From the sequence record PQ015379.1: a stretch of DNA of 64,000 nt; one strand, written 5' to 3'. A program made the position numbers and the translations under genes. The notes below the pieces were generated by a model, which did no database searches, was not told the origin of the DNA, and saw nothing but the letters and a program-made list of their open reading frames with translations. Positions 18,081-49,776 of the stretch are shown here, piece after piece. Position 1 is the first letter of the stretch. The number at the start of each line of letters is the position of its first letter.

Positions 18081-18093
18081 TTTCAAACTCTAC

Positions 18094-29960: not shown

Positions 29961-32049
29961 TAATCTTCCAGCCCCAAAAGTTTGCGACGGTTCACCGCGT
30001 CTTCCGACACAACGGCACGGAACCATTGTTCATCGGCGGCGCTGGCAAACGGGTTGATTTGAATCAGTTTGCGGTGGCTCGGATCGAAGGCGATTGGGCC
30101 GATATATTCCGGGCCAACTTCCCCCAACCTTTGATGCGCACCAGATCCTGATCTTTTACAGATTTCGGCGCAGCTTTACGGCATTCGTCGAAGGTCATTC
30201 CGCCGTAGAGCGTACCTTTCGAATCGAGTGCAGCATACAGCGGGGCCTGCACGCAGAACACACGGCCTTGCTTGAACAGGTCAGGCAGCAGGCGGTACAA
30301 AACTGCGAGATACAGAACCGCGATGTGGCCGCCGTCCGGGTCCGGGTCAACGAGGAACAGAACGGATTTCACGCGAAGTTTTTCAACGTCGATTTTCGGA
30401 CGCTCGGCCTTCGGGTCCATGGTCTTCAGGTCGCAGCCCATGGCGATCAGGAAATTGGAAATATCCTTGTGCGTGATGATTTTCGCAATCGGGGCCTTCA
30501 GGGCGTTCAGTGGTTTACCACCGGCTGCCAGAACTTCCTGATAATGCGTGTCGCGGGCGTCGTCGGACGGGCCTTTTGCCGAGTCACCTTCAACCACGAA
30601 CAGTTCACGTTCCCACGGTTTGCAGTGCGGGCTAACAGCCAGCTTGGCAGGCAGTACGCCTTTGCCTTTTTTCTTCACATCGGCCATGGATTTCACGACA
30701 GCGGCCAGTTCTTCCCGGCCCTTGTTCATGATCAAGGCGCGCTTGATGATATCCTTGGCGACTTTCGGGTTCGCTTCGAAATATTTGTCGAAAGCGGGGA
30801 ACAGAAGTTCTTCCACTTCCTTGTCAACTTTCGAACTCAGTTTGTCCTTCACCTGCGAGGTGTAGGCCGCGCCGTGCATACGCCAGTCGAACATCCCGGT
30901 GAGGCCGATCAGCAGGTCGGAACTGGTCCAACCTTGGCCCGCTTTTTTACTCTTCGCTGGTTTCTTTTCCGGCACGTGTTTTTTCACAGCCTTGGAAAGT
31001 GCGGCGGTGAAACCAGTCACGTGCGAACCACCGTCGATGGTTGGCGAGGTGTTCACGAAAGTCAGGAAGTGGTCGGCGTCCGTGTGGTCAGACCAAACGA
31101 GGGCACAGGTGATGTTGTCGTTTTTGAACGTGAACGGTTTGCCTTGCGGCACCAGATCGCGCTGTTCGCACATGTCTTTTGCGACGAAAGCCAGATCCTT
31201 TTTGTTCAGATACACATGGTCGTCACGCTTGCCCTTCACGATGGAAGAGAAACGAATTTCCAGACCGGGGTTGAGCATGGCCATGTTGTTCAGCCACTGC
31301 GCCACATCCTTGACCACAGGAATTGCACGGCGGAAATCTTTTGGCAATTTCTTGCCCCGGCGTGCGTCTTCGGAACAGACGGTTTGGTCGAGTTCCAGTG
31401 CGACGATGGTTCCGTATTTTTTCAGGCTATCTTTCAACAGGCCCATAACGTCTTTATCGACGGCCTTGCAGGGCAGCGGGTTTTTCCCCTTGGAAATGAT
31501 TTCGCCTTTGCTGTACACCTGCGTTTGCAGCTTGCCGCCGTACGTGGTCCAGACGCGCATGCGATCCGAAACCGCGTTCACCGCCGACATACCGATGCCG
31601 TGAGTACCCGCCGAAGTTTTGTACGCCGAATCGTTGAACTTGGCGCCCGCGTGGGTCTTCGTGTAGGCAGCGGTCATTTTGCTGATTTTCGTACCGTCTT
31701 TCATTTTCACGAAGTCGGTAGGAATGCCGCCCGCTTGGTCAGCGATGATGTAAATTTCGGCGTCGATGTTGAGGATAACTTCGATCACCTTGTTACGGCC
31801 TGCCACGTGTTCGTCGTAGCAGTTATCGACGCCCTCTTTGACGCAGCGGTAAGCCATGGCCGACCCACGATCACCGAGGTACATCGCCGGGTTTTCGCGG
31901 ATACCGTCGAGGCCTTCAAGGACCGTGAAATCTTCCTGCGCGCTCACTTTCTTTTTGGTGGCTTTCTCGACGCCTTGTGCCACCTTCGTTTTCTTCGGTT
32001 TTTCTTCAGCGGCAGCTTTCGCTTTCGCCTTCACTTTCTTCTCGGCCAT
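29960..32049 (-). CDS. gyrB: type IIA topoisomerase B subunit (GyrB/ParE-like), interrupted by a -1 frameshift at 30121-30125
   Basis: GIRENPAMYLG, EGVDNCYDE, GTHGIGMSAVNAVS, VVEGDSAKG, VDPDPDGGHI; one extra G in TGGGGG restores KGWGEVGPE...FDPSHRKLIQI...RRKLLGLED. Confidence 0.9.
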
Positions 32050-32293
32050 TGGGGTTCTCGATGGATTCAAATTCTTCGGTTGTGCCGACCCACGCCAGAC
32101 GACAAGTCAACAGTTCGTCGGCTGTGAAATCTGACATGCGGCGGTAATTGTTGTCGAACAGCCAGTGCTGGTACGCGGCCCGCGACACGGAGCCGGGCGG
32201 ATACTCGCTGTAGAAACGTTGCACGTACCCTTCAAAATTATATGGCGCAATTTTGATGTGTTCGCCCCACGGTGTCACCATGACCAGTTCCAT
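32006..32293 (-). CDS. hypothetical protein
   Basis: 95 aa ORF. Confidence 0.55.
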   Translation of the reverse strand: MELVMVTPWGEHIKIAPYNFEGYVQRFYSEYPPGSVSRAAYQHWLFDNNYRRMSDFTADELLTCRLAWVGTTEEFESIENPNGREESEGESESCR

Positions 32294-32316
32294 GATCAGT
32301 ACCTTTGCGAGGTTGG

Positions 32317-32715
32317 TTATTCGCGGTCGAGAATTGCGCGAATTTCTTTGAGCTTCTGTTCGAGGCCAACGGAGCTATGCACCGCGTCGCGCTCGGCGTC
32401 GTAGGACACTTCGGCCAGACCTTGGAGCCGTTCGTTTTCTTCGCGCACGGTTTTCAGTTCACGCTCAAACTCGACGCGTTGCATTTTCTCTTTGATCGCT
32501 GCGTCACGCCACGAATCATAGCCGGGCGGGCCGATCAGCAGCAGACCGCCTTCGTCCGTGATCACGCCCAGCGCCCGCGCCTTGGGGCCAGTGCCGTTCG
32601 GATAAGTGCTGCCATCGCGAACGCTGGTCACGATATCGTGATAGTCTTTTTGGCTACACTCTTCCCACTCGGAATTAGCAAACCATTTCGCTTCGTAACG
32701 GACGACTTCAACCAT
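32317..32715 (-). CDS. hypothetical protein with coiled coil
   Basis: 132 aa ORF. Confidence 0.65.
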   Translation of the reverse strand: MVEVVRYEAKWFANSEWEECSQKDYHDIVTSVRDGSTYPNGTGPKARALGVITDEGGLLLIGPPGYDSWRDAAIKEKMQRVEFERELKTVREENERLQGLAEVSYDAERDAVHSSVGLEQKLKEIRAILDRE

Positions 32716-33100
32716 TGTTCTGTTCCTTCAGGATTTTGCGGCCCGAGGCCTTCAGCGAACGTTGGATGGCGCGGGCGGTCACGGCCTGAATGTGTTGCGA
32801 CAGCTGCAATTTCGCTTCGGTGCGCATGGCGCTGAATTTCAACGCGTGGCAATCGCTGATTGCGTATTCGTTTTCGAGTTCTGCACCGGCCTCAAGCAGC
32901 AACACGGCGCCAGTCTCCGGATCTTTGACGCAGACCAGATAACGGGCACCGTGCAGTTCGATAACGTGGTGATGCTGGAACGTGAAATCTTTGGCGGTCC
33001 GGCGACGGTCCGGCTTGAAGTTGCTGGCGTTGCTCAGGATGCGCTGACGGGTATAAACGTTCCCGTTGATATCCGGGTTTTCCATCGAGGATTTCAGCAT
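32708..33100 (-). CDS. hypothetical protein
   Basis: 130 aa ORF. Confidence 0.65.
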   Translation of the reverse strand: MLKSSMENPDINGNVYTRQRILSNASNFKPDRRRTAKDFTFQHHHVIELHGARYLVCVKDPETGAVLLLEAGAELENEYAISDCHALKFSAMRTEAKLQLSQHIQAVTARAIQRSLKASGRKILKEQNNG

Positions 33101-33666
33101 ACGATCACCTTACCTTGTCGAACTTCGAATTCGTGTTGTGCACCGAGGATTTCCAGCCACAGGTCGAAATAGCGCAGCAGCTGCGAGCTTCGAGCATGCG
33201 TGCCCCAGTGATATTTCATGAAATCTTTTTTGTTCTGCACCTTGTCTGCGATCAGCATGTACCGTGTGCGTAGATCAAGCAGGCCATAATTGCGAACAAT
33301 GGCAGCCTCGGCTTCACGGCGGCCCCACGGGTCGGTGGCTTCCCGGCACAGAAATGCGTTTGCAGCCAGCCGGTAATTCATCGCGCACTGCAACGACTCT
33401 TCGATGCCGATGATTTGTTGCAGATGTTCATGATTCATCTGCAAATCTTTCAGGTCTTGAACCAGCGGATGCAGGCAATAGCCGCCCATGGTCGGCAGAT
33501 CCGCGTCGAGGAAACGCAGAATTTTCAAACCTTCGTCGATGTGGTTCATCAGCGGCACGCCCGAGCGTTCTGCCCGGCGATTGCCGTAGTGTTCTTGAAT
33601 CAGCGCATATTCGATGGTGTCTTCGATATTTCCGGTGTAAGGCACCAAGCGTTCTGGTTCTTGCAT
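33094..33666 (-). CDS. SpoT/Mesh1-like HD-fold protein with degenerate HD motif
   Basis: HYGNRRAERSGVPLMNHI (cf. H.GQ.RKSGEPY..HP), CLHPLVQD (cf. LLHD.VED), LIADKVQN (cf. KLADR.HN); start MQEPER at 33666. Confidence 0.55.
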   Translation of the reverse strand: MQEPERLVPYTGNIEDTIEYALIQEHYGNRRAERSGVPLMNHIDEGLKILRFLDADLPTMGGYCLHPLVQDLKDLQMNHEHLQQIIGIEESLQCAMNYRLAANAFLCREATDPWGRREAEAAIVRNYGLLDLRTRYMLIADKVQNKKDFMKYHWGTHARSSQLLRYFDLWLEILGAQHEFEVRQGKVIVC

Positions 33667-33723
33667 ACACGTGCACCTAACGTTTGTGGTTATGCCCATT
33701 ATTTACAGTTTTTGCCACAAACG

Positions 33724-33757
33724 AAAAAACCGCGATCAGGTGGCCCCGGTCGCGGTT
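33724..33757 (-). terminator. intrinsic terminator
   Basis: AACCGCGA stem with TCGCGGTT and T tract on the minus strand. Confidence 0.7.
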
Positions 33758-33763
33758 CTTCTT

Positions 33764-34456
33764 TTAGCGGTTACGCAGCTTCACATCCTGATAGGGAATG
33801 GTGAAATCGATGCTCGAAGCGGTGGCCACCAGCGTATTGCCGGTATCCGAATCGTCAAGTTTTTTATTCCCTTCCTGTTTAGCGTTCGGGTCGTCCTTGC
33901 TGAATTCGCGAGCCTTGTTCGCCTCGGCTTCGCGTTTTTCTTTCTCTTCCTCTTCGACCGCCGGGTCCACCACTTTTTCAGCGGATTCAACAGGGATCAC
34001 GTCGGATTCTTTGCGCGAGGATTTCACGTTCGGATACGGTTCGGGAGTGGCCGACGCGGTAGCCTCTTCGTCGTCCTCTTCGTCGTCTTCCTCTTCCTCT
34101 TCGTCGTCCTCGGATTCATCATCTTCGGAATCGTCGCCGTCGTCCGAATCATCGGAATCATCCCCGTCGTCGCCGTCGTCAGATTCCTCTTCCTCTTCGT
34201 CCCCCGAATCGCCAGTTTCTTCACCAGATTCAGCCGGGGTTTGCGGAGCTTTCTTCGCGTCTTTCTTCTGCTTTTCAGCAGCAGCTTTGCGTTCTTCCTC
34301 GGCCTCTTTTTCTTGACGCGCTTTTTCTTCGCGGTCGCGTTCGGCCAGTTCCTGATCGGAATATTGCAGTTGTTCGGCGGTGCCCATGTCTGGCGCGCTG
34401 TACGCACCCGAGGCCGTGGCTACCGGCTGCTTGGGAATCGAAATGGTGATCTTCAT
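33764..34456 (-). CDS. acidic disordered protein with three ATAS motifs
   Basis: 230 aa; long D/E/S tract. Confidence 0.75.
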   Translation of the reverse strand: MKITISIPKQPVATASGAYSAPDMGTAEQLQYSDQELAERDREEKARQEKEAEEERKAAAEKQKKDAKKAPQTPAESGEETGDSGDEEEEESDDGDDGDDSDDSDDGDDSEDDESEDDEEEEEDDEEDDEEATASATPEPYPNVKSSRKESDVIPVESAEKVVDPAVEEEEKEKREAEANKAREFSKDDPNAKQEGNKKLDDSDTGNTLVATASSIDFTIPYQDVKLRNR

Positions 34457-35589
34457 TTTTTCGTGAGCCTCAGAGTCTTTTTCTTGGCCTTGGAATCAGG
34501 CGATTTCATTTTGAGTTTCTTCGGTTTCTTGCGCTGGGCCTCAAGCGATTCTTTCACATCGTCTTCGAGGTAATTGCGCATGTTGTTCGTGATATCCAAA
34601 ACCTTGATCAGCTGATCAGCCTTCAGTGCGTGCAGCATGTTGTCCTTGAGTGCGCGTTTGTCGAAGCACACTTTTTCCATCGGGCAAGGTTCGTACGCAG
34701 GCATCAAGCGTTCGTAGTCGTCCGGGCACTGGCAAGGTTTCTGCTTGATCGCAATTTCCGGTTTGTTCTGGATGAAACTGTTCACAGCAGAGCGGTAAAT
34801 TTTCTTCTGCTGGATGATCAGCTGGCGCGTTTCTTCACGACGGCGCGGTCCCCAGCGTTCGGCCTTCTCTTTGAATTCGTACGGGTTGTCCCGGCTCAAG
34901 TACAGCAGCGAGAAACCAGAAATTTTCATGCCGTATTTTTTCTCAAGCACGTAGCAGTAGGTCGGAACCTGCATCAAGTGTTCGCGCTTGGGCAATTTGT
35001 TGCCCTTCATCAGACCTTTTGTCGTGGTCTTGTAGTCGAGCACCCAATAGGTGCCGTCCGGCATTTCATAAATGCAGTCGATGTGGCCTTTCAGCCCGAA
35101 GTAATCGATGCACTTTTCCACGTACTCACACGCGACCCCACATTCGGGGCACAGGTTGTCCGTGGTGTTTTTGGTGGTCAACGTACCTTTGCGGTACATC
35201 ACACCTTTTTCGTCGTACAGGTCGCGGGCGTCGTGGTGCTTCTGGCACCGAGGGTTGCGGCATTTCCAATCGCCGAAAACCTTTTTCGTTTGCCCCATGT
35301 AATACTGAATATTTTCGTGTGCAGCGGTCCCAACCGAGGTGAAGTAGCCACCGCCTGCTGCCATGTTTGATTGGTAGAATCCGTGCTCGGCTGCGAGCAT
35401 GAATTGCATGTGTACCAGAATCGGGCAAATGGGGAATGACGAAGGCCGGTATTCTGGCCCTCGACCGTTCGGGGTGATAATCGAGCTATCCATTATTTGG
35501 GCGTACACTTTGCCCATATGCGACTCGATGTGCACCGACCGTTGACCGGTCTGAATACGTTTCGCTAAGTCCTTAAACACGTGGCACAT
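34453..35589 (-). CDS. Cas4/RecB-like PD-(D/E)xK exonuclease, probably Fe-S binding
   Basis: YRPSSFPICP, GTAAHE, GHIDCI...VLDYKTT, QVPTY, KPC...CP..KVC; Lys-rich C-tail. Confidence 0.8.
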   Translation of the reverse strand: MCHVFKDLAKRIQTGQRSVHIESHMGKVYAQIMDSSIITPNGRGPEYRPSSFPICPILVHMQFMLAAEHGFYQSNMAAGGGYFTSVGTAAHENIQYYMGQTKKVFGDWKCRNPRCQKHHDARDLYDEKGVMYRKGTLTTKNTTDNLCPECGVACEYVEKCIDYFGLKGHIDCIYEMPDGTYWVLDYKTTTKGLMKGNKLPKREHLMQVPTYCYVLEKKYGMKISGFSLLYLSRDNPYEFKEKAERWGPRRREETRQLIIQQKKIYRSAVNSFIQNKPEIAIKQKPCQCPDDYERLMPAYEPCPMEKVCFDKRALKDNMLHALKADQLIKVLDITNNMRNYLEDDVKESLEAQRKKPKKLKMKSPDSKAKKKTLRLTKK

Positions 35590-35595
35590 CCAGTA

Positions 35596-35664
35596 ACTGT
35601 AAATGGTACTTATAAATTGTCATTTTGATGGTCGAAACATGAAACTCGATGATGCGTTTACAGT
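35596..35664. promoter_or_regulatory. divergent pair of ACTGTAAA motifs
   Basis: ACTGTAAA (+) at 35596-35603 upstream of primase; TTTACAGT at 35657-35664 (minus copy) upstream of the Cas4-like gene. Confidence 0.65.
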
Positions 35665-36721
35665 CATCATGGGAGAGCTTGAAAAGATTCAAGGTCCGAC
35701 CCGGCACAAAGCGGGCAGCTTTGAAATCGTTTGTCCTTTCCATGAAGATTCTAACCCCTCGCTCGGCATTAACATCAGTCAGGAAGCGAAAGTCCCGGTC
35801 GGCACGTTCAACTGCTGGTCGTGTGGCGCTTCAGGATCGTGGAATAAACTTGCGGCTAAACTCGACCTGCAACAAATCAAATCGTGGCAGCATTTCGAGG
35901 GGACGACAGCCGGGCAGCGTGCACGCTTCAACAGGAAAAAGAAAGAGCGTGAGAACACCAACAACCGTTCGCTTAATCGTCTGCGTGAGGAACTGGGCGG
36001 CGCGATGATTCCGTGGCCCAAAGAAAAAGAATGGCGCGGTTATCCGGGGACAATGATCGAGCGTGTGCAAGGTCAAATGTTCAGCGAGGACAACCGGGAA
36101 GACGTGATGCTCGCTCTACCTATTTACATTAATGGTCGGTATAGGGGCGGCGTAAAAGCGTTGATGGAAAAAGCCGAAACCGGCATGTCCTATATCAACA
36201 CCAAGGGCGACTGGGTAATGGATTATGGGTTGCTCGGTTACGATTTTATCCGCAAGCATGAACTGTTCGGCTGCAAGGCCGTGGTGCTGTGTGAGGGTCC
36301 ACGCGACTGGCTGCGTCTGGTGCTGAATAAAATCCCGGCGTGTGCGGTGCTCGGTGCAAAAATGTTCGGGCCACGAAAGCTGATGCTGTTGCAGGGCCTC
36401 GGTATCACGAAAATTTACACGTTGACGGATAACGACAAAGCAGGCCGGGCCATGGCGCGCTTGATCGAAGGTTTCTGCGAAGGTCAGATCGAATTCGAGG
36501 AACTGCGACTGCCGCGCAAGTTCGATAAAGATGGTGAGTTGATCAAGCTGGACCCGGACGCCGCCAGCCAGAAAATCATCGACAAGGTGAAGGCGCTGGT
36601 CTACGCGTACGACCCTGATCCCAAACCGAAAAAGAAAAAGCCCAAGGCTATCGAGAAAACCAGCAAGGAATTCCCGAAGCTATCCATCGAAAAGAAAGTT
36701 AAGAGGATTAAGAAGCAATGA
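35639..36721 (+). CDS. dnaG: DnaG-type DNA primase
   Basis: CPFHEDSNPS...FNCWSC zinc finger; TOPRIM VLCEGPRD...LTDNDKAG; start MKLDD at 35639. Confidence 0.88.
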   Translation: MKLDDAFTVIMGELEKIQGPTRHKAGSFEIVCPFHEDSNPSLGINISQEAKVPVGTFNCWSCGASGSWNKLAAKLDLQQIKSWQHFEGTTAGQRARFNRKKKERENTNNRSLNRLREELGGAMIPWPKEKEWRGYPGTMIERVQGQMFSEDNREDVMLALPIYINGRYRGGVKALMEKAETGMSYINTKGDWVMDYGLLGYDFIRKHELFGCKAVVLCEGPRDWLRLVLNKIPACAVLGAKMFGPRKLMLLQGLGITKIYTLTDNDKAGRAMARLIEGFCEGQIEFEELRLPRKFDKDGELIKLDPDAASQKIIDKVKALVYAYDPDPKPKKKKPKAIEKTSKEFPKLSIEKKVKRIKKQ

Positions 36722-37014: not shown

Positions 37015-37020
37015 CGCACC

Positions 37021-38259: not shown

Positions 38260-38695
38260 GGGGGAATTCAGTTTCGTACAGGAAGCATTGGAAGGTCAGG
38301 CGGTGCAGCACAAATTCGCGCTCGCCGCCCGGCATCTTCGAATAGCCGGTGCTGGTATTTTTCAGACGCAGGCAATTCAGCTTGCGAGTGGCCATCACAC
38401 GTTTCGAATTCGATTCGGTATACAAGAAAATTTCTTTCGGCAATTCAATCGTGCCGTAGGCAATCCCGTACAGGTATTCGATGTTTTGCAGACGCTCGAC
38501 GACCCCCAGTTGCAACTGGTAGGGGCGGGTTTTCTCTTCGTACCCCATGGCATCGAAATCCAGATTCGCGTAAACCACGTTATCCAGAAAGATTTCAGGC
38601 ATCTTGTTTTTGGTTGCGTCGGGATTGTTCCCGATGGAAAACCCGGCCCGTGTCAGCTTTACGTCGAATGTGTAGACTGGTGTATCTGCTTTCAT
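38246..38695 (-). CDS. hypothetical protein
   Basis: 149 aa ORF. Confidence 0.7.
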   Translation of the reverse strand: MKADTPVYTFDVKLTRAGFSIGNNPDATKNKMPEIFLDNVVYANLDFDAMGYEEKTRPYQLQLGVVERLQNIEYLYGIAYGTIELPKEIFLYTESNSKRVMATRKLNCLRLKNTSTGYSKMPGGEREFVLHRLTFQCFLYETEFPLGNK

Positions 38696-38742
38696 TTTTG
38701 ACGCCCATTTTATGGTCCAATGTTCCCTTATATTTACATTAT

Positions 38743-39375
38743 TTAAAGGGAAGGGGCGTCCAAAAGTACGTTGAACAAACGGGTTTCGTCCGTATGACTT
38801 TTGATAAAATCATAGGGTTTCACGCGAAGCAGACGGGCCGCGTGATAAAGCGCGATAAAGAACGAATCCAGCTGGTGAATCACGATCCCGGCCCCTTTGT
38901 ATTTGACCTTGAGGTCTTCATACATTTCTTTCAAATCGGCTGGGGTCCGGTTGAATTCGTTTTTCCACGTGGCCGCCGTGTAAAACTCGGTTGGAATGTC
39001 CGGATGAATCAGCAGCATGGCCCCAAGCATCATGCCAATGGCTTCGACCGTGGTGCCAGCCCCGCGACCGGGCCGCGATTGGAAGCGTTCGGCTGCGATG
39101 AAATCAATGGTTTCGAGCGGGAGCGTTTTGTACTCTTTGACGAACTCGACGCATTCGGTTTGCGCCAGCTTCACGTCATGAATCATGTGCTCCATCATTT
39201 TGGTGCCAATGACCTTGAAGCGCATTCCGCCTTCTGGTCCCAACCACGCTTCGATTACCGTCACCGCGTAGTTTTTTGTGCCCATGTCTTCGCCCATTAC
39301 ACGAATGCGTTTGGTGCGCGGCACAGGCAATTCTTGTTTGACCGGTTTGGCTTTCGCCTTCCGTTTACGGGCCAT
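38743..39375 (-). CDS. RuvC-like Holliday junction resolvase
   Basis: RVMGEDMGTKNYAV, FIAAERFQSR, HQLDS; basic N-tail. Confidence 0.7.
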   Translation of the reverse strand: MARKRKAKAKPVKQELPVPRTKRIRVMGEDMGTKNYAVTVIEAWLGPEGGMRFKVIGTKMMEHMIHDVKLAQTECVEFVKEYKTLPLETIDFIAAERFQSRPGRGAGTTVEAIGMMLGAMLLIHPDIPTEFYTAATWKNEFNRTPADLKEMYEDLKVKYKGAGIVIHQLDSFFIALYHAARLLRVKPYDFIKSHTDETRLFNVLLDAPSL

Positions 39376-39462
39376 GGGTCAGTCTCCTATCTCATACCAC
39401 TTAATTACAATTCGCATCCTCGGTTTTTCGACCAGTAATTTAAAGGGAACGGAGGACATTCT

Positions 39463-40551
39463 ATGATCAAACGCGGACCCAGCAATGTGCGGCGCAATCA
39501 CGCCCGCAACTTCATCCAAACGCAGGCGCAAGCCCGCATGGATGAAACGGTTAAGGCTTACAACCATCAAGTTTCCAATGCGCTGGCCGTCAACGCGGTG
39601 CAGATTGTTTTGTATCAGGTAGAACGGCAGGTCGGGCGCCCCTGTTCCTGCTGCCGAACCAACGTTGCAATTCCGGGCAGCGTTTCCAACGTAACGCCCA
39701 CGATTCCCCAGCGCGACAGGGCAACGGACGGTATTGAATTCGGTTTCCAAGACGACGATATTTTCGGCGCGGAATCGGAAATGGATCAGCACATGTTCAA
39801 CGATGTGCAGGTGCGCGACGTTTCCGGTAGTCAGCCCGACGAAGGTCTGCGCGGAATTGAAACGGAAGAGTACGAAGATTCGGTAGGCCAAGGTTCGGTG
39901 AATTGCGGTATCTGTTACCGCTCGCTGAAACAGCCGGGCTACAAAGCGTATGGTATGCAGCGCACGATTTACACGCACTACGATATCGAACGCATCGAAG
40001 GCTACCATCTGGATTCCACCAGCGCCCCGCACGCGTTGGTACGCGAACACAACGACGGCCATGTGTGCTTCCGTCTGATGATCCCGAAATATTTCAAGTC
40101 GGTGATCTACAGCATTCGCGAAGATTTGTACGTGCTGCGTGAGAAACCGCTGCGCAAAGACGGCGCTATCATCACCATCGACGACCTGCGCCGTCACGCC
40201 GGGCAGTTCATGGAAATTTACGTGAAGTCCGAGCGCTTTACCCACGTCGTTTTCGAATTCGACATGGGCATCCCTCGGATCAACGCGAACATTGGCGGGG
40301 AAACCACGACCCTCGATTACGACCGGCTGCAAACCATGAGCGATATTCCTATTGTTTTGGGTCCGGAAGTTTCGGACGTGAACGAAGGCGATATCGTGTG
40401 CATTCCCGAACGAAATCTGTACCTGAAAATCCGCGACAAAGAACGGAAGATCATGCAGGATCAAGCCCGGTTGGAATGGGTGTGTTCGTCCCGTGTTCTT
40501 CAACCCACTGAGCCACTGCGTGCCATTGCCAAAGGATACAAACTGCGATGA
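39463..40551 (+). CDS. possible virion (neck/head-closure-like) protein
   Basis: 362 aa; PCSCC and NCGICY pairs; GGAGG RBS; function is a weak guess. Confidence 0.4.
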   Translation: MIKRGPSNVRRNHARNFIQTQAQARMDETVKAYNHQVSNALAVNAVQIVLYQVERQVGRPCSCCRTNVAIPGSVSNVTPTIPQRDRATDGIEFGFQDDDIFGAESEMDQHMFNDVQVRDVSGSQPDEGLRGIETEEYEDSVGQGSVNCGICYRSLKQPGYKAYGMQRTIYTHYDIERIEGYHLDSTSAPHALVREHNDGHVCFRLMIPKYFKSVIYSIREDLYVLREKPLRKDGAIITIDDLRRHAGQFMEIYVKSERFTHVVFEFDMGIPRINANIGGETTTLDYDRLQTMSDIPIVLGPEVSDVNEGDIVCIPERNLYLKIRDKERKIMQDQARLEWVCSSRVLQPTEPLRAIAKGYKLR

Positions 40552-43187: not shown

Positions 43188-44153
43188 ATGCCGTCTATTT
43201 ACCTGCCTGTTTATGCGCATGCCGATTCACAAAAAGGCAAATGCCTTGCAGCCCAATACGCAGGCATGCAAAGCATTCTGGTGCAAAGCTGCGTTGCGCT
43301 GGCAGCTGTTTCGGAAGGCCGGGCTAATCCTTTGTGGGATTTGCCAGAACACATTGTTGCCAAATACACCGACCCGGATAAAGCGATTGCAACCGCTGAC
43401 ATTATCGCGCAGCGAATCATTGAACGTTTCGACATTCGCAATTACAACGATTGGCTGGATGTTCGGCCTACGATTGAGCGCCTGTATTCGTCGGTGGCGG
43501 TGTTTGAAGACAACGACCTGTACACCGAACACGTGCGCTTCCATGATCGCTGGTACACCCGCGAATGGGAAAAAGTGACGTTCAAAAAACCGAAAGGTGA
43601 AGACGGTTTCATGCTGCACCTCGACGACAGCGACGGCAATGTGGGGATCGCGGTTGCGGTCGATGGTGCTGAATTCAAATCGCTGAAAAGCGGTAGCCTG
43701 CTGTACCGCAAAACTTCGCAAAATTCCCGTGACAAACACCCGAGCCTGAAGGCGTACAAGGAAAACGGGAACTGGAAGAAAATGATGGAAGTCTACAGCG
43801 GCTTCGATCTGTTCAAAGCCCGTGATCGTTCGCAACTGATTAGCCAGTGCGCGGTGGAAGCCCTCGAATCGGCGGCGCACCTGATCATCATGTCGCCGGG
43901 CAGCCGTGAAGAAACCAAATTCAATTTGACCAACGGTTTTAACGAAGTGGTCGAGCTTTTGGAATTGGCGGCCCTTCAGACGCGCCATCGCGATTTGGAA
44001 AAACGCGTTTTCGTAGATCACGCGGCCACCTACGGCCTCAAGGCACAATGCGAATCTGCGAACCCTGCTGCCGAAATGGCGGCGATGTTGACGGCCTTCT
44101 ACCGCCCGGATCTGGTGCGTTCGAAGAAAAAGAAAACTGTAAAATCTAAGTAG
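43188..44153 (+). CDS. hypothetical protein
   Basis: 321 aa; AGAGGA RBS; first gene after 630-bp noncoding gap. Confidence 0.8.
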   Translation: MPSIYLPVYAHADSQKGKCLAAQYAGMQSILVQSCVALAAVSEGRANPLWDLPEHIVAKYTDPDKAIATADIIAQRIIERFDIRNYNDWLDVRPTIERLYSSVAVFEDNDLYTEHVRFHDRWYTREWEKVTFKKPKGEDGFMLHLDDSDGNVGIAVAVDGAEFKSLKSGSLLYRKTSQNSRDKHPSLKAYKENGNWKKMMEVYSGFDLFKARDRSQLISQCAVEALESAAHLIIMSPGSREETKFNLTNGFNEVVELLELAALQTRHRDLEKRVFVDHAATYGLKAQCESANPAAEMAAMLTAFYRPDLVRSKKKKTVKSK

Positions 44154-44182
44154 AAGTAACGAAATCCACCTAGGACAACATC

Positions 44183-45772: not shown

Positions 45773-46119
45773 GCACACCACAAGCTTTGCGCAAAGTGAA
45801 AGTGTGGCGCGTGCAGGCCGGGACCGAAAAGCACAACCCGGTTTTTAAAGGCGACTGGTTCTTGGGCGACGACTGGAAAAAGGAATCGTGGCCGCGTGAT
45901 ACCGTGGTCGAAGTTCGCGAAATCTTTTTCTCTTTCATCTGGCGCACGCGGATCGAAGGCAAAGGCCGGATCAAAATCAGCAGCCGCCAACTGTGGACCA
46001 TGAAATCGCGGCGTGAAGCGCAGGTGCTCTACGCCAATAACGGTTCGCCATACGGCGGCCATTACGTTTACCACGAAGAGGCACACGACGATGAATTCGA
46101 CCCAGCCCCCGAATCCTGA
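45769..46119 (+). CDS. hypothetical protein
   Basis: 116 aa coupled ORF. Confidence 0.7.
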   Translation: MSTPQALRKVKVWRVQAGTEKHNPVFKGDWFLGDDWKKESWPRDTVVEVREIFFSFIWRTRIEGKGRIKISSRQLWTMKSRREAQVLYANNGSPYGGHYVYHEEAHDDEFDPAPES

Positions 46120-46336
46120 AGAAATCGCGCCGAATATCGTGCAGCAAATGTTGGGTCGCATTCACCCGCATAAACCGCTACCGTCACACGTCGATATCCC
46201 CGGTGAATTCTATGGCTGGCCGCTGCGTCTGGTGCCACGGAATTGCAGCACCTGCTGGGAACTGGGCGAAGGCCCTGATCAGGAATGGATTGAAAATAAT
46301 CCGTTGAACGTCGTGCATCTGACACCGAATGCCTGA
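46091..46336 (+). CDS. hypothetical protein
   Basis: Probable start MNSTQ at 46091. Confidence 0.55.
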   Translation: MNSTQPPNPEEIAPNIVQQMLGRIHPHKPLPSHVDIPGEFYGWPLRLVPRNCSTCWELGEGPDQEWIENNPLNVVHLTPNA

Positions 46337-46634
46337 TCCTTTTGTGATCGTCTACTGTGCAGAAATTTCTGATGCGTTGGCCAAAATTCCCGAAGAGGAT
46401 TGGCCTTCGCATGTGGACGATCCAGAACACCGGCTCTACGGCCACCCGATGTTCCTTTTGACCGTGAGCCAAACACAACATATTGGCATCAGCAATAAAC
46501 CGAATCCAGATTGGATAAAATCCCACAAACTAATGCTGCGTTACGGACTCGTTGAGCCGCGCAGTTATGGAGCGACCAATGAGCGACGAACCGAAGAAAA
46601 AGAAGAAAAAGAAAAAGGGGTTGATGAAATCTGA
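46329..46634 (+). CDS. hypothetical protein
   Basis: 101 aa ORF. Confidence 0.5.
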   Translation: MPDPFVIVYCAEISDALAKIPEEDWPSHVDDPEHRLYGHPMFLLTVSQTQHIGISNKPNPDWIKSHKLMLRYGLVEPRSYGATNERRTEEKEEKEKGVDEI

Positions 46635-47790
46635 ATCCCTTGACCTGAAGCCGAAGAAGAAAAAGAAATCTTCCGAGGAACAGGAAACCGGCCTCAAGAA
46701 AAAGAAGCCGAAGGACTATGGGCGTGACGTGAGTGGCACCCTCGAAGGCGACGGCAAGAAGAAAAAGAAAAAGGATTTGGCGGAAAAACCCGCTGAACCT
46801 GTTCGCGAACTTCTGCCGGTCGAACAAGACGATTACATCATCGTCAAAGTCGGCAAGAAAAACGAACTCGCCTTCGCACACAGCCCCAAGCGTAACACCG
46901 CGTACATCGAGCGCACGATGAACACCGATGCGCCGGTTACTTTCGAATATGACGGTAACACGCTGATTGCCAACCTCGGCAAAGATCCACTGCCCGGCAA
47001 AGTGCATGGCGTGGATATCCAGCCGCACTATGGCACCATCGATACCCCAATGGGGCCGATGCACATGTACCGCAAACTGAACGACGCGGAAAAAGATGCA
47101 ATCCGTATCGCGCAGAAAAAGATCGTGAAGAAATTCGAAAGCCTCGGCCTCGAAAAACTCTTCCCGTTCACCTCGCTGGAAGTGCACAACCCACGCGGGC
47201 GCTGGGCCGGTATGTATCAGGTCAGTTTCAAATCTGGCGAGGCAGTGGACAAGGTAAAACTGTTCGCGAAAATCCTCGACGACCAAATTTACAACCAGTA
47301 CGTTTTCGCCCACGAATGCGGCCATGGCATCTGGTATCGCTACGTGCCCGAGCGCATCCGCGCCCTGTGGCTGGAACAGTACAACGCGATGACCGCTGTC
47401 ACCAAGGCCAAGAAATCCGAACTGGCCGACCAGTGCCAATCGCTGATCGCTTCGTCGCTGTCGATTCGTGATTTCCAGCGTGATCTGGAAGGCGATGAAC
47501 TAGCGATGTTCAAGGAAGCGCTGGGCTACCTGAAGAAAGTCCACAAAATGTCGCCTGAAGACGTGAACGTTCTGCTGAACCAAAACAGCAAAGTGCTCGC
47601 CGAAATCTGGCCGACTTCTGCCTCGATTTCCAACGCCGATTCGCTGGCCGCGCTGCATGGTCCGTACGCCGCCGTTTCCGTGCAGGAAATGTTCGCAGAA
47701 ATCTTTGCTGCGCACATCAAAGGCGATCACGTGGGCAAGACCCTGACCAAGCTGCTGGAAAAAACCCTCAAAGTCGCACGGAGCGAATAA
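46579..47790 (+). CDS. zincin-type metallopeptidase with poly-Lys N-terminus
   Basis: FAHECGHG (HExxH) and distal QEMFAE; start MSDEPKKKKKKKK at 46579 with GGAG RBS. Confidence 0.7.
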   Translation: MSDEPKKKKKKKKGLMKSESLDLKPKKKKKSSEEQETGLKKKKPKDYGRDVSGTLEGDGKKKKKKDLAEKPAEPVRELLPVEQDDYIIVKVGKKNELAFAHSPKRNTAYIERTMNTDAPVTFEYDGNTLIANLGKDPLPGKVHGVDIQPHYGTIDTPMGPMHMYRKLNDAEKDAIRIAQKKIVKKFESLGLEKLFPFTSLEVHNPRGRWAGMYQVSFKSGEAVDKVKLFAKILDDQIYNQYVFAHECGHGIWYRYVPERIRALWLEQYNAMTAVTKAKKSELADQCQSLIASSLSIRDFQRDLEGDELAMFKEALGYLKKVHKMSPEDVNVLLNQNSKVLAEIWPTSASISNADSLAALHGPYAAVSVQEMFAEIFAAHIKGDHVGKTLTKLLEKTLKVARSE

Positions 47791-47793
47791 CCA

Positions 47794-48048
47794 ATGGGCG
47801 AAGATGATTTGAAATACGAAGAGGCGTTGCTGCTGGGCGGTCCGCACAACGGGCAATTCCTCGACGTGATCGTCGGCGCCGAACAAGTGTTGGTGCGCGG
47901 TGATCAATCGGTTGCTGCGCACGAACAAAACGCATGGGTGTATAAACGACACGAACTGCGGTCCAACACCGGGCGCAGTTACGCGATCTACACCTACGGC
48001 AAAATCGACATTCTGAAAACTCTTCTGGAAGGGTACAAAAAACTATGA
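47794..48048 (+). CDS. hypothetical protein
   Basis: 84 aa; LLLGGPHNG. Confidence 0.7.
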   Translation: MGEDDLKYEEALLLGGPHNGQFLDVIVGAEQVLVRGDQSVAAHEQNAWVYKRHELRSNTGRSYAIYTYGKIDILKTLLEGYKKL

Positions 48049-48311
48049 AGAAAATTCTGATTATTTTGTCGCTACTATCGGTCGCCGGTTGCGGAGACGA
48101 TAAAGTCTACGTCGATGCCACGACCGGCCAGCGTGTAGCGGCCCCGGAAGAGCGCAATCTGGAATCTTTCAACTATACGAAATCCACGAATTACGCGATG
48201 GATCGTATGTGTATCGATGGTGTTGTGTACCTGCGTTATGATCGCGGGATCACCGTCGCTTTCAAATCTGACGGCACGGTCGCTCGCTGCAAAGGGGCGC
48301 AGCTACTATGA
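48045..48311 (+). CDS. lipoprotein
   Basis: MKKILIILSLLSVAG-C signal II/lipobox. Confidence 0.8.
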   Translation: MKKILIILSLLSVAGCGDDKVYVDATTGQRVAAPEERNLESFNYTKSTNYAMDRMCIDGVVYLRYDRGITVAFKSDGTVARCKGAQLL

Positions 48312-48556
48312 CCAACGCCACGTGGTGGATCTTGGGCCTGTTTTTCGCGGGCGTCCTCGCACTGATCGTGGTTGCGGTTTATCGTGGCCGGGCCAAGCCT
48401 GAACCAACACCGACGAAACGCAAAAATCCTAAAAGCCGGATGGAACGCAAACTGTCGCGGGAAGTTTACGCGAAGGCCATCAGACACGGCGCTACCGAGG
48501 CCGAAGCGCGCAAATGCGTTGCCCTCTACCTAAAACGCCGGGCTGCTAAACTGTAA
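48308..48556 (+). CDS. small N-anchored membrane protein carrying a KAIRHGATEAEA module
   Basis: TM WWILGLFFAGVLALIVVAVY then basic domain shared with 60727..62025. Confidence 0.8.
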   Translation: MTNATWWILGLFFAGVLALIVVAVYRGRAKPEPTPTKRKNPKSRMERKLSREVYAKAIRHGATEAEARKCVALYLKRRAAKL

Positions 48557-48591
48557 ATACAGGGTAAGCCCTCAATCGAAGTGACTGTGAC

Positions 48592-49776
48592 ATGGCAAAA
48601 GAAGTGAAGAAGAAAAAGACGTTCAAATCTGACACCGAAGAGAACGTGAAGGCCGCCAAGAAAAAAGCGAAAGGCAGTGGCGAAAAGCTCACGCTCGAAA
48701 CTTCGCAGCTGGCCAACGAATACCGCCCGCGTAAGCTGGATCAAGTAGTCGGTCAAGACACAACGGTCGCGGCCCTCGAAGGTATGTTCAAGCGCGGAAA
48801 GATTCCGCAAGTTATGCTTTTCTCCGGTCACTACGGCTGCGGCAAAACGTCGTTCGCCGGGATCGTGGCCCGCATGATCAACTGTGAAACGCTCAACCTG
48901 TGCGGCAAGTGCGTAAGCTGCCGTATGGGCAAACACCCTGACCTGATCGAACACGACGCGGCGGTCAAAGGCAACATCGACGCCATCCGTTCGCTGATCG
49001 CAGCAGCAGGCAACGCCCCGAGTTTCCGCAAGCGTGTAATTCTGGTGGACGAAGTGCACGCCCTGCGCGACCAAAGCGAAAAAGCGATGCTGACCAGTGT
49101 GGAAAATCCGCCGCCGAATACCATTTGGTTGCTGTGCACCACCAACCCGGAAAAAATGAACAAGGCGTTGGTTAGCCGGGCAACGCATTTCCGCCTGAAG
49201 CAAATCGAACTCGACACCATGGTCGAGCGTCTGAACTTCATCGCCGAAGCCGAAGGGCAGAAGCTGAAGAAAGAAGTCAAAAAAGCGATTACCACCATCG
49301 CAGAATCCAGCAACGGCTCGCTTCGTGAAGCAGTGTCCAAGCTGGATTTGTTGCTTTCGGTCCTCGCATCCGGGCGCAAGTACAACCCGGACGACCTGAG
49401 TTCGTTCGTCGATATCGAAGCAGACCTCGACGAATATTCCGCGCATTTCCTTGCGTCGATTTTCAAACGCGACCTGATCAAGATGGTGCAGTGCGCCAAG
49501 ACCTGCGGCGGTGTTCGCGGCCTGATCAACAAAACGCGCTGGCTTGTTGAATACAAGATCGGACAGCACACCGGCACCAACAAATACACGCCTTACAACG
49601 GCAAGCTTTTCGATGCGCTGGCCAAACAGGAAGGGATCAAGAAAACCGGCATCAAGCCGCTGATCATGATCCAGAATTTGCTGAGTGAAATCGAAGTCAA
49701 ATTGAACAGCGCGACGCTCGACGAAACCGTTGTGTTCTATAGCTCGGTCGGCGCCTTTATCGCAGAGAACGAATGA
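48592..49776 (+). CDS. dnaX: DNA polymerase III gamma/tau-like clamp loader ATPase
   Basis: YRPRKLDQVVGQ, GHYGCGKTS, CGKCVSC, ILVDEVHAL; ACTGTAAA at 48550-48557 upstream. Confidence 0.85.
   Translation: MAKEVKKKKTFKSDTEENVKAAKKKAKGSGEKLTLETSQLANEYRPRKLDQVVGQDTTVAALEGMFKRGKIPQVMLFSGHYGCGKTSFAGIVARMINCETLNLCGKCVSCRMGKHPDLIEHDAAVKGNIDAIRSLIAAAGNAPSFRKRVILVDEVHALRDQSEKAMLTSVENPPPNTIWLLCTTNPEKMNKALVSRATHFRLKQIELDTMVERLNFIAEAEGQKLKKEVKKAITTIAESSNGSLREAVSKLDLLLSVLASGRKYNPDDLSSFVDIEADLDEYSAHFLASIFKRDLIKMVQCAKTCGGVRGLINKTRWLVEYKIGQHTGTNKYTPYNGKLFDALAKQEGIKKTGIKPLIMIQNLLSEIEVKLNSATLDETVVFYSSVGAFIAENE

What the first reader, a model, noticed from the sequence alone, without database searches (positions are those of the whole stretch)
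32049..49776. Many replication/recombination enzymes carry an added Lys-rich tail
Seen: RecA N (KAVTKAKKLDLKEDK...), GyrA N (MAKTKEVAKVKAKK), GyrB N (MAEKKVKAKAK...KPKKTK), DnaX N (MAKEVKKKKTFK...KAAKKKAK), RuvC N (MARKRKAKAK), SWIM N (KTKKVKV...KK), peptidase N (KKKKKKKK), primase C (KPKKKKPK...KKVKRIKK), Cas4-like C (RKKPKKLKMK...KAKKK). Bacterial homologues generally lack such tails. Inference: a shared electrostatic address tag, NLS-like, that partitions the replisome into a DNA- or polyanion-rich compartment, fitting the acidic/basic cluster.
Basis: partly seen in the sequence, partly recalled or inferred. Interest (0 to 1): 0.75.

Follow-up and report, generated by a model that had tools for sequence, protein, structure and literature searches.

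The report
Lysine-rich tails on phage replication enzymes
In a 314-kb Pseudomonas phage about a third of the DNA-handling enzymes carry an extra floppy, lysine-rich end piece that bacterial versions lack; the pattern is real, conserved among related phages and apparently undescribed, and it most likely acts as a generic electrostatic tether to DNA or other polyanions, but that function is inferred, not shown.

Summary
The window is Pseudomonas phage HRDY3 (PQ015379.1, bases 124001-188000), a jumbo phage of the Lu11/PaBG group. All nine quoted tails exist. They are add-ons of 21-78 residues next to cores that match RecA, type IIA topoisomerase A and B subunits, DnaX-type clamp loader, DnaG-type primase, a PD-(D/E)XK nuclease, a RuvC-fold resolvase and a metallopeptidase. 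Several lie outside the stated coordinates.

The enrichment is real. In the whole HRDY3 proteome, 11 of 30 proteins annotated as DNA-handling have at least 7 Lys in a terminal 30 residues, against 18 of 419 others (p=3e-7) and 0 of 29 virion proteins. PaBG repeats the result (p=2e-6).

Tails are about 30-47% Lys and nearly Arg-free. The clamp-loader tail is modelled at low confidence. Tails diverge and gain indels faster than the cores, yet keep their composition. They are gained and lost gene by gene and can change terminus. Half of a much wider phage RecA-like family carries basic N-tails.

Best reading: disordered polycationic tethers that hold enzymes on phage DNA or polyanions, perhaps together with the phage's own acid-block proteins. 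An obligatory NLS-like address tag is unlikely. No direct functional evidence exists. I rate this a new variant of a known kind.

The parts
6493..8019 (-). RecA/UvsX-like recombinase gene; Lys-rich N-tail = residues 1-48 (7876-8019)
   Evidence: Pfam RecA 62 bits. Residue 78 aligns to E. coli RecA residue ~39. Tail has 14 K, 0 R. Tail also present in PaBG gp116 and in half of the wider family.
8083..9276 (-). SSB-like gene; 118-residue C-tail (8086-8439) of alternating acidic and Lys blocks, ending in an acidic-aromatic tip
   Evidence: phrog_15004 SSB, E=8e-120. Tail has 50 K, 31 D/E. Meets the formal PASK definition. Same build in PaBG gp117 and in locus L022.
13804..14466 (-). SWIM-motif protein of unknown function; N-tail residues 1-45 (14332-14466)
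   Evidence: phrog_18980, unknown function. Pfam SWIM E=0.11, below cut-off. Tail has 14 K, 4 R. Start codon abuts the upstream stop.
16133..16678 (-). Lys/Glu-block protein ending in an acidic-aromatic tip; candidate partner or scaffold
   Evidence: Sequence. PASK-positive at residues 94-179. Counterparts of like build and gene order: PaBG gp124 and AD1 gp321.
16850..17380 (-). Protein with a Lys-rich N-tail (17312-17380), a ~60-residue domain and ~110 consecutive Glu
   Evidence: Sequence. Tail has 9 K, 0 R. No Pfam or PHROG hit. Counterparts of like build: PaBG gp125 and AD1 gp320, with poly-Asp/Glu ends.
17517..18080 (-). Unknown protein with Lys-rich tails at both ends (N 17991-18080, C 17520-17597)
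   Evidence: phrog_22271, unknown function. Composition. Counterpart of like build: PaBG gp126.
18094..19026 (-). Unknown protein with a Lys/Pro/Ala C-tail (18097-18162)
   Evidence: No family hit.
28079..29670 (-). Type IIA topoisomerase A-subunit gene ('GyrA'); read in two frames in this record (one frame change); N-tail residues 1-30 (29581-29670)
   Evidence: Pfam DNA_topoisoIV on both ORFs. Residue 52 aligns to E. coli GyrA residue 20. One ORF of 528-558 aa in 9 relatives, PaBG and AD1. Tail present in all of them.
29960..32049 (-). Type IIA topoisomerase B-subunit gene ('GyrB'); one frame change in its 3' part in this record; N-tail residues 1-37 (31939-32049)
   Evidence: Pfam DNA_gyraseB, Toprim, HATPase_c. 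Residue 41 aligns to E. coli GyrB residue ~10. Relatives are 695-703 aa in one frame. Tail is 12-41 aa in relatives.
34453..35580 (-). PD-(D/E)XK (Cas4-like) nuclease; C-tail = last 33 residues (34456-34554)
   Evidence: Pfam PDDEXK_1 38 bits. Tail has 13 K, 2 R. Tail is 26-46 aa in close relatives and absent in PaBG gp152.
35639..36721 (+). DnaG-type primase (CHC2 zinc finger + Toprim); C-tail = last 36 residues (36611-36718)
   Evidence: Pfam Zn_ribbon_DnaG, Toprim_2. Tail has 14 K. Tail is 17-56 aa in relatives. The PaBG primase ends where the HRDY3 tail starts.
38743..39375 (-). RuvC-fold Holliday-junction resolvase; N-tail residues 1-21 (39313-39375)
   Evidence: phrog_18317, E=3e-64, profile starts at residue 22. 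AF2 model pLDDT 89.7, first strand at residue 23. Foldseek top hits are RuvC, E~1e-6. Invariant D30, E96, H167, D170. The tail is at the C-end in PaBG, P0096 and P0097.
43188..44153 (+). Unknown protein with a short Lys-rich C-tail (44118-44150)
   Evidence: No PHROG hit.
46579..47790 (+). Zn-metallopeptidase-like protein (HExxH); 78-residue N-tail (46579-46812) with Lys runs and acidic/Ser patches
   Evidence: phrog_17197 peptidase, E=8e-108, profile starts at residue 79. No Pfam or PDB relative. Tail has 27 K. PASK-positive at residues 1-46. Tail kept in locus L023, where the clamp loader has none.
48592..49776 (+). DnaX/RFC-type clamp-loader ATPase; N-tail residues 1-37 (48592-48702)
   Evidence: Pfam DNA_pol3_delta2 83 bits. 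Residue 38 aligns to E. coli DnaX residue 5. AF2 pLDDT 33-49 for residues 1-30 and above 90 in the core. 35 of 38 phage-clade homologues have a 16-41 aa tail; the bacterial DnaX examined have none.
60727..62025 (+). 432-residue Lys/Ala/Pro-rich histone-H1/AlgP-like protein with two RGRP (AT-hook-like) motifs
   Evidence: Sequence. No Pfam or PHROG hit. RGRP motifs.
22395..24284 (-). 629-residue protein: repeated small domains joined by Lys/Ala/Pro linkers, then a (Glu5-Val)n block
   Evidence: Sequence. No Pfam or PHROG hit.
1..360 (-). N-terminal part of the replicative DNA helicase gene; its Lys-rich C-tail lies outside the window (record 122852-124360)
   Evidence: Annotation. The C-terminal 70 residues carry Lys runs. 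PaBG DnaB-like gp110 has a similar C-tail.

Best explanation
The tails are intrinsically disordered polycationic extensions, 21-78 residues long, about 30-47% Lys and almost no Arg. They were added to the N- or C-end of many of the phage's DNA-transaction proteins.

They most likely act as non-specific electrostatic tethers to polyanions, above all the replicating phage DNA. A tether would raise each enzyme's local concentration, residence time and processivity on DNA, and so keep the replication and recombination machinery together on the phage genome.

Shown: the tails exist, are enriched in DNA-handling proteins, keep their composition, and are absent from bacterial homologues; the one tail modelled in detail is predicted at low confidence.

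Inferred: that they bind DNA, and that this is what selection maintains.
For: - Enrichment in DNA-annotated proteins: HRDY3 11/30 against 18/419, p=2.7e-7; none in 29 virion proteins. Replicated in PaBG: 14/28 against 10/117, p=2.4e-6.
- Add-ons relative to solved bacterial homologues and to PHROG profiles.
- Low model confidence in the clamp-loader tail, pLDDT 33-49 against above 90 in the core. The resolvase tail scores lower than its core, 61-74.
- Composition is constrained while sequence is not. Pairwise identity is 0.56-0.78 in tails against 0.83-0.85 in cores. Gap fraction is up to 0.38 against at most 0.02. The Lys fraction stays at 0.24-0.47.
- The tail can sit at either terminus of the same enzyme: the resolvase has it at the N-end in HRDY3 and at the C-end in PaBG, P0096 and P0097.
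- Graded lengths and gene-by-gene gain and loss fit an affinity-tuning module.
- In the wider RecA-like family 62 of 120 cluster representatives have basic N-tails: 50 Lys-dominated, 8 Arg-dominated. So charge, not lysine as such, is what persists. Two of these tails are made of repeated RGRP (AT-hook-like) units.
- The tails are translated as far as gene structure shows. Most start codons follow GGAG-like sites or abut the upstream stop, and most have no alternative ATG at the core border. Lys runs prefer AAG (57% against 42% in cores, p=7e-4), so they are not plain poly-A slippage tracts.
- Precedent: lysine repeats in the C-terminal domain of actinobacterial topoisomerase I confer high processivity (PMC7398561).
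Against: - There are no binding or localisation data of any kind.
- Several tails hold acidic and Ser patches (clamp loader, peptidase, SSB) that pure DNA tethers do not need.
- The 14:1 Lys:Arg ratio in HRDY3 is not required for DNA binding.
- Tails also occur on a metallopeptidase, a Nudix hydrolase and proteins of unknown function.
- Many DNA enzymes of the same phage have none: topoisomerase I, SbcC, SbcD, NAD ligase, sliding clamp, 5'-3' exonuclease.
- The co-conserved acid-block proteins suggest protein partners as well.
Confidence: 0.5

Rival explanations
1. Protein-docking tails. The basic tails bind the acidic blocks and acidic-aromatic tips of phage hub proteins: the SSB-like protein, the poly-Glu protein and the Lys/Glu-block protein. 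This would build an electrostatic replisome network, in the way the acidic tip of E. coli SSB recruits its partners.
For: - The SSB-like protein has a 118-residue tail of alternating acid and Lys blocks with an acidic-aromatic tip. PaBG gp117 and the distant phage in L022, whose tip resembles the bacterial SSB tip, have the same build.
- The helicase, the recombinase and the 16133 protein also end in acidic tips.
- The acid/base gene trio is matched by genes of like build and order in PaBG and AD1.
- The tail-bearing proteins (clamp loader, primase, helicase, recombinase, nucleases, topoisomerase, polymerase) cover the same functional classes that E. coli SSB partners belong to; E. coli SSB recruits at least 17 proteins through its acidic tip (PMC10018359).
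Against: - Known SSB-tip partners use folded pockets, not disordered Lys runs.
- No co-variation between tail charge and acid-block length was tested.
- Tails come and go on single genes while the acid-block proteins stay.
- This reading is compatible with, and hard to separate from, DNA tethering.
Confidence: 0.2
2. Partition tag for a membrane-less compartment; this is the core of the first reader's idea. Tails, together with the phage's poly-Glu, acid-block and H1-like proteins, phage DNA and perhaps host polyphosphate, form a charge-driven condensate. Lys-rich tails partition enzymes into it.
For: - Charge-block proteins are dense in the same module: SSB tail, 16133, the poly-Glu protein, 22395 with a (Glu5-Val)n block, and the H1/AlgP-like 60727 protein.
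- 7 of 464 proteins (1.5%) meet the formal PASK definition, against 0.05% reported for E. coli (PMC12345225).
- The strong Lys-over-Arg bias matches the report that Lys-to-Arg changes abolish polyphosphate binding of PASK-like regions (PMC12345225).
- The host's own H1-like AlgP sits on polyphosphate granules (PMC9239181).
Against: - There is no evidence that any condensate forms.
- Most enzyme tails do not meet the PASK definition.
- Essential enzymes lack tails in some relatives, which is awkward for a required partition signal.
- Arg-rich tails occur in other lineages of the RecA-like family.
Confidence: 0.15
3. NLS-like import signal for a protein-shelled phage nucleus of the phiKZ/Chimalliviridae kind.
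For: The only evidence is a superficial likeness of Pro-Lys runs to classical nuclear localisation signals.
Against: - The record's 481 annotated features include no chimallin, tubulin or multisubunit RNA polymerase. They do include a sigma-70-type factor and a family A polymerase.
- PaBG and its relatives are placed in a cluster separate from the chimallin phages, whose signature genes are listed in PMC12390700.
- The largest unknown protein in the module has no Pfam or PHROG match.
- Tails are dispensable in some lineages.
Confidence: 0.02
4. By-product without function of its own: neutral low-complexity expansion, or A-rich 5' coding sequence that only serves translation initiation (many tails start Met-Ala-Lys).
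For: - Lys is the commonest second residue (72 of 464), and 13 proteins start Met-Ala-Lys, 5 of them with at least 8 Lys in their first 30 residues.
- Tails are indel-prone.
Against: - C-terminal tails cannot serve initiation.
- N-tails run 21-78 residues, far beyond an initiation region.
- Enrichment by protein function holds in two genomes.
- Lys fraction is held constant through indels.
- AAG is preferred over AAA in tails.
- Tails persist down to 39% core identity.
Confidence: 0.06
5. Packaging signal: the tails carry the enzymes into the capsid with the DNA, so that they are injected.
For: The only support is an analogy from general knowledge with basic internal proteins of other phages. 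No result here supports it.
Against: - None of 29 annotated virion proteins has such a tail.
- The 14 abundant PaBG virion proteins reported do not include the tailed replication proteins or gp124-126 (PMC7412058).
- The tail-bearing genes lie in the replication module.
Confidence: 0.03

Closest known systems
Lysine-repeat C-terminal domain of actinobacterial topoisomerase I (also Lys-rich tails of actinobacterial and Deinococcus HU)
   Same: A disordered Lys-rich extension is added to a conserved DNA enzyme. Its length varies between lineages. It is reported to raise processivity on DNA (PMC7398561).
   Different: There it concerns one or a few chromosomal proteins of a bacterium. Here a dozen or more enzymes of one phage module carry tails, at either terminus, often with acidic/Ser patches. 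No sequence relationship was found or sought beyond composition.
Histone H1 C-terminal domain and Pseudomonas AlgP
   Same: Lys/Ala/Pro-rich, Arg-poor, disordered composition. AlgP associates with polyphosphate granules in the host genus (PMC9239181). The phage also encodes a free-standing protein of this type (60727-62025).
   Different: H1 and AlgP are architectural proteins made largely of such sequence. Here short versions are appended to enzymes. No Pfam match was found.
Acidic-tip hub of bacterial SSB, and acidic C-tails in the phage T7 replisome (the T7 case is from my own knowledge)
   Same: Replisome and repair proteins are held together by electrostatic contacts between disordered tails and partners (PMC10018359). 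The functional classes of the tail-bearing proteins overlap those of SSB partners.
   Different: The polarity and the scale differ. Here the clients carry long basic tails, and the hub proteins carry long acid and basic blocks.
PASK (polyacidic Ser/Lys-rich) polyphosphate-binding motifs
   Same: Lys runs mixed with Ser, Asp and Glu in disordered regions, with lysine rather than arginine being essential (PMC12345225).
   Different: Only the SSB tail, the 16133 protein and the peptidase tail meet the formal definition. Most enzyme tails are of a Lys/Ala/Thr/Val/Pro type.
Classical nuclear localisation signals and protein import into the chimallin phage nucleus
   Same: Short Pro-Lys-rich basic clusters at protein ends.
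   Different: No shell, tubulin or multisubunit RNA polymerase genes are annotated. The tails are far longer and more variable than an NLS and are dispensable in some lineages.

Membership tests
RecA/UvsX recombinase | RecA ATPase core matched by the family profile | tested here: met
   Pfam PF00154, 62.4 bits against a cut-off of 27. PDB RecA hits. 291 relatives at E<1e-30.
Type IIA topoisomerase (GyrB/ParE and GyrA/ParC subunits) | GHKL ATPase + transducer + Toprim in B; winged-helix/tower breakage-reunion domain in A | tested here: met
   Pfam and PDB hits. The A subunit is only ~530 aa in relatives, so the GyrA C-terminal wrapping domain is missing. I call it a topoisomerase II/IV-like enzyme rather than a gyrase (inference).
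DnaX/RFC clamp-loader ATPase | AAA+ module with the DNA_pol3_delta2 profile and lid | tested here: met
   Pfam, 83 bits. E. coli gamma/tau, E=9e-35.
RuvC Holliday-junction resolvase | RNase H-like RuvC fold | tested here: met
   AF2 model pLDDT 89.7. Foldseek top hits are RuvC of Thermus, E. coli, Deinococcus and P. aeruginosa, E~1e-6, target-normalised TM 0.63-0.73.
RuvC Holliday-junction resolvase | Conserved acidic/His catalytic residues | tested here: inconclusive
   D30, E96, H167 and D170 are invariant in 33 homologues. Their equivalence to the RuvC catalytic residues was not checked by superposition.
SWIM zinc finger | CxCxnCxH profile match | tested here: inconclusive
   The motif is visible in the sequence, but Pfam SWIM gives E=0.11 and 12.5 bits, below the cut-off of 19.6.
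PASK polyphosphate-binding motif | A 20-residue window with at least 75% D/E/S/K and at least one K (definition in PMC12345225) | tested here: not met
   Met only by the SSB tail, the 16133 protein and the peptidase tail. Not met by the RecA, topoisomerase, primase, nuclease, resolvase or clamp-loader tails.
AT-hook | RGRP core flanked by basic residues | tested here: not met
   No RGRP in any HRDY3 enzyme tail. Two in the H1-like 60727 protein. Repeated copies in the N-tails of 2 of 150 RecA-family representatives.
T4 gp32-type LAST motif, (Lys/Arg)3(Ser/Thr)2 | Motif more frequent than chance | tested here: not met
   5 occurrences against 2.5 +/- 1.6 in shuffles.
Chimallin-type phage nucleus with protein import | Signature genes: chimallin, PhuZ tubulin, two multisubunit RNA polymerases (PMC12390700) | tested here: not met
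   None among the 481 annotated features of the record; a sigma factor is present instead. This rests on annotation only. No structure-based search for a shell protein was run.
Intrinsically disordered basic tail (functional class, not a homology family) | Low predicted order, composition conserved while sequence and length drift | tested here: met
   pLDDT 33-49 in the clamp-loader tail. Tail against core identity and gap statistics. Tails in 35 of 38 clamp-loader homologues.
Intrinsically disordered basic tail (functional class) | Binds DNA or another polyanion | not testable with these tools
   No binding data can be computed here.

The most novel reading that the evidence does not exclude
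A jumbo phage group without a protein-shelled nucleus encodes its own polyelectrolyte system: poly-Glu and acid-block proteins, H1-like proteins and an SSB with a charge-patterned tail. This system condenses with phage DNA into a membrane-less replication factory. The Lys-rich tails are the partition code that decides which enzymes enter. Basic tails on the widespread phage RecA-like family would then mark the same principle across many large phages.
Probability: 0.15. Interest if true: 0.85.

Novelty: new variant of a known kind. Interest (0 to 1): 0.6.

Why it matters
Disordered basic tails that tune DNA enzymes are known one protein at a time. Here one phage module carries them on most of its replication, recombination and topology enzymes. 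They sit next to conserved poly-acidic and H1-like proteins, and the trait recurs across at least three phage genera and a much wider RecA-like family.

If the tails organise the replisome in space, this gives a second, purely electrostatic route to viral replication-factory formation in bacteria, besides the chimallin nucleus.

There is also a practical point. Gene callers and annotators can clip such tails, as the PaBG peptidase start suggests, and low-complexity filters hide them. They are probably under-reported.

Tried and rejected
- LAST-like motif after Lys runs: not above chance.
- Formal PASK motif: met by only three tails.
- Phage tRNA-Lys supply: HRDY3 has no tRNA genes, although PaBG has two tRNA-Lys.
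- Poly-A slippage origin: tails prefer AAG.
- Mis-called starts: most N-tail starts have GGAG-like sites or abut the upstream stop. Most have no alternative ATG at the core border, though a few in-frame ATG or GTG codons lie near it.
- Pfam, PHROGs and PDB sequence searches found no relatives for the peptidase core, the SSB core, the acid/base proteins or the 629-residue protein, beyond the PHROG names.
It was rerun without that row as A3.
- The contig of the Arg-rich representative P0111 gave no DNA.
- Literature searches found nothing on HRDY3 or on Lys-rich tails in jumbo phages.
- The third homologue search and the metagenome and genome scans were not used.

Slip: the script printed the spans of the aligned pieces of the two topoisomerase genes. 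These show roughly where their frame changes lie.

Full report
WHAT THE WINDOW IS. The window is identical to bases 124001-188000 of Pseudomonas phage HRDY3 (PQ015379.1, 313,683 bp). Its nearest named relative is Pseudomonas phage Lu11. PaBG and the Dickeya and Erwinia Alexandravirus phages are more distant members of the same group (PMC7412058). I fetched the rest of the record. I called genes with a codon model whose calls reproduced 10 of 11 spot-checked annotated genes exactly.

CHECK OF THE OBSERVATION. Every quoted tail is present.

Most of the named protein identities hold:
- Pfam, above curated cut-offs: RecA, both type IIA topoisomerase subunits, a DnaX-type clamp loader, a DnaG-type primase and a PD-(D/E)XK nuclease.
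- PHROGs: the resolvase, the peptidase and the SSB.
- The resolvase model has a RuvC fold.
- 'SWIM' rests on a motif seen by eye only.

The tails are additions next to the conserved cores:
- About 30 residues on the B subunit.
- About 32 on the A subunit.
- About 34 on the clamp loader.
- About 40 on RecA.
- 21 on the resolvase and 78 on the peptidase.

The finding's coordinates cover only part of the set. There are also more tails than were listed: SSB, helicase, PolA, a small polymerase, an HNH endonuclease and a Nudix hydrolase.

IS IT MORE THAN CHANCE?
- Proteome Lys is 6.5%.
- Terminal 30-residue windows with at least 9 Lys are four times as frequent as interior ones, and about zero are expected binomially.
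- I used the depositor's product names as a blind classification. 11 of 30 DNA-handling proteins have at least 7 Lys in a terminal window, against 18 of 419 others (odds ratio 12.9, p=2.7e-7).
- None of 29 annotated virion proteins does.
- 19 of the 29 tail-bearing genes lie in the 122-212 kb replication module.
- The same test on 142 kb of PaBG gives 14/28 against 10/117 at the 6-Lys level, p=2.4e-6.

ANATOMY OF THE TAILS.
- In 15 tails of the window Lys:Arg is 213:15. The other frequent residues are Ala, Ser, Pro, Thr, Asp and Glu, and net charge is +6 to +19.
- Several tails carry acidic and Ser patches between Lys runs: clamp loader, peptidase, SSB.
- The clamp-loader tail is modelled with pLDDT 33-49, against above 90 in the core. 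The resolvase tail scores 61-74.
- Lys codons in tails are 57% AAG, against 42% in cores (p=7e-4), so the runs are not poly-A slippage tracts.
- Most N-tail starts follow GGAG-like sites or abut the upstream stop, and most have no alternative ATG at the core border.

EVOLUTION.
- Clamp loader: 35 of 38 phage-clade homologues, down to 39% identity, have a 16-41 residue Lys-rich N-tail with almost no Arg. Three clade members and the bacterial DnaX examined have none.
- In HRDY3 and six close relatives the tails of five enzymes are always present. They evolve faster than the cores (identity 0.56-0.78 against 0.83-0.85) and have many indels (gap fraction up to 0.38 against at most 0.02). Their Lys fraction stays at 0.24-0.47.
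- PaBG and AD1 keep tails on both topoisomerase subunits. PaBG also keeps them on the recombinase, SSB, helicase, PolA, an HNH endonuclease and, shortened, the clamp loader.
- The PaBG primase and nuclease lack the C-tails, and PaBG SbcC has one that HRDY3 lacks.
- The resolvase tail is N-terminal in the 63-100% identity group, absent in several members, and C-terminal in PaBG and two distant homologues.
- In a tail-less clamp-loader lineage (L023) the resolvase is also tail-less but the peptidase keeps its tail.
- An exhaustive search with the recombinase shows a large family. 62 of 120 analysable cluster representatives have basic N-tails of median 42 and up to 134 residues. 50 are Lys-dominated and 8 Arg-dominated, and two are built of repeated RGRP units.
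- One such distant phage (L022, 216-kb contig) again has a long recombinase tail and an SSB with acid and Lys blocks and an acidic tip.

CONTEXT.
- The same module encodes a striking set of charge-block proteins: the SSB tail; a Lys/Glu-block protein with an acidic-aromatic tip; a protein with about 110 consecutive Glu; a 629-residue protein with Lys/Ala/Pro linkers and a (Glu5-Val)n block; and an H1/AlgP-like protein.
- The acid/base trio has counterparts of like build and gene order in PaBG (gp124-126) and AD1 (gp319-321).
- None of these has a Pfam family.

HOW IT MOST LIKELY WORKS. The facts are these: enrichment on DNA enzymes, low model confidence, composition kept but not sequence, free choice of terminus, graded length, gene-by-gene turnover, and Arg-based versions elsewhere. 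They fit a generic, tunable polyanion tether best. The tail adds non-specific affinity for DNA and so raises local concentration and processivity. Lysine repeats of actinobacterial topoisomerase I are reported to do the same (PMC7398561).

Docking on the phage's acidic hub proteins is a close rival, and the two may coexist. It is analogous to the SSB acidic tip that recruits at least 17 partners in E. coli (PMC10018359).

A condensate or partition-tag reading, possibly involving polyphosphate, is not excluded. It would explain the acid-block proteins and the lysine preference (PMC9239181, PMC12345225). However, essential enzymes without tails in some lineages argue against an obligatory tag.

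A chimallin-type nucleus with NLS-like import is unlikely. No signature genes are annotated, a sigma factor is present, and the group is separate from the chimallin phages (PMC12390700).

A neutral by-product, a translation-initiation effect and a packaging signal are each contradicted by several results.

COMPARISON AND NOVELTY. The closest known things are Lys-rich tails of single bacterial DNA proteins, H1/AlgP, SSB and T7 electrostatic replisome contacts, and PASK motifs. None describes a module-wide set of tails in a phage. I found no paper on HRDY3 or on such tails in jumbo phages in the searchable library. I rate it a new variant of a known kind. The function is inferred only.

LIMITS AND A SLIP.
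- Functional classes come from the depositors' names.
- Thresholds for 'tail' are arbitrary, though three thresholds gave the same result.
- The PaBG test used my own gene calls.
- The two topoisomerase genes of HRDY3 each show one frame change relative to all relatives.
- The script printed alignment spans that reveal roughly where the changes lie, which I should not have printed.

Noticed in passing
window 28079-29670 (-) and 29960-32049 (-): Both type IIA topoisomerase genes of HRDY3 are read in two frames, one frame change each. The 9 IMG/VR relatives, PaBG and AD1 each have a single ORF (A subunit 528-558 aa, B subunit 671-703 aa). Whether this is a sequencing error or real is undecided.
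   Followed up: partly
window 16133-18086 (-): A trio of extreme-charge proteins: a Lys/Glu-block protein with an acidic-aromatic tip, a protein with ~110 consecutive Glu, and a protein with Lys tails at both ends. PaBG gp124-126 and AD1 gp319-321 have the same build and gene order. None has a Pfam family.
   Followed up: partly
window 22395-24284 (-): A 629-residue protein with the highest coding score in the window. It has four to five repeated small domains joined by Lys/Ala/Pro linkers, then a (Glu5-Val)n block. No Pfam or PHROG match.
   Followed up: partly
window 60727-62025 (+): A 432-residue Lys/Ala/Pro-rich, AlgP/histone-H1-like protein with two RGRP (AT-hook-like) motifs.
   Followed up: partly
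L021 2894-3955 (PaBG gp304 peptidase): An upstream in-frame ATG would add a 32-residue Lys-rich N-tail that the RefSeq start leaves out. Annotated starts may clip such tails.
   Followed up: partly
RecA-like family, proteins P0098-P0247; L022 10001-12604: Many representatives are 800-1290 aa with two matched stretches, which suggests inteins inside the recombinase gene. The L022 gene carries Intein_splicing and LAGLIDADG hits.
   Followed up: no
L018 4740-7355 (PaBG): PaBG encodes two tRNA-Lys(UUU) plus tRNA-Asp, tRNA-Ala and tRNA-Thr. Four of the five lie together in one short stretch. These amino acids are frequent in the tails. HRDY3 has no tRNA genes at all.
   Followed up: partly
HRDY3 record 1-243, 240-479, 1719-1958 (L003): Small early-region proteins with basic C-termini. 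The ends of the first and the third are near-identical, which suggests a paralogue family.
   Followed up: no
HRDY3 record 38577-39947 (L003); PaBG gene 37 (PMC7412058): HRDY3 annotates a glutathionylspermidine-synthase-like gene, and the PaBG paper lists a RimK-related gene. Enzymes of these families act on polyamines or add poly-Glu (own knowledge). This could bear on the cell's polycation and polyanion balance.
   Followed up: no
L023 (190-kb metagenomic contig, GC 44%): In this relative the clamp loader and the RuvC-like resolvase have no basic tails, while the neighbouring peptidase keeps a Lys-rich N-tail. Tails turn over gene by gene.
   Followed up: yes
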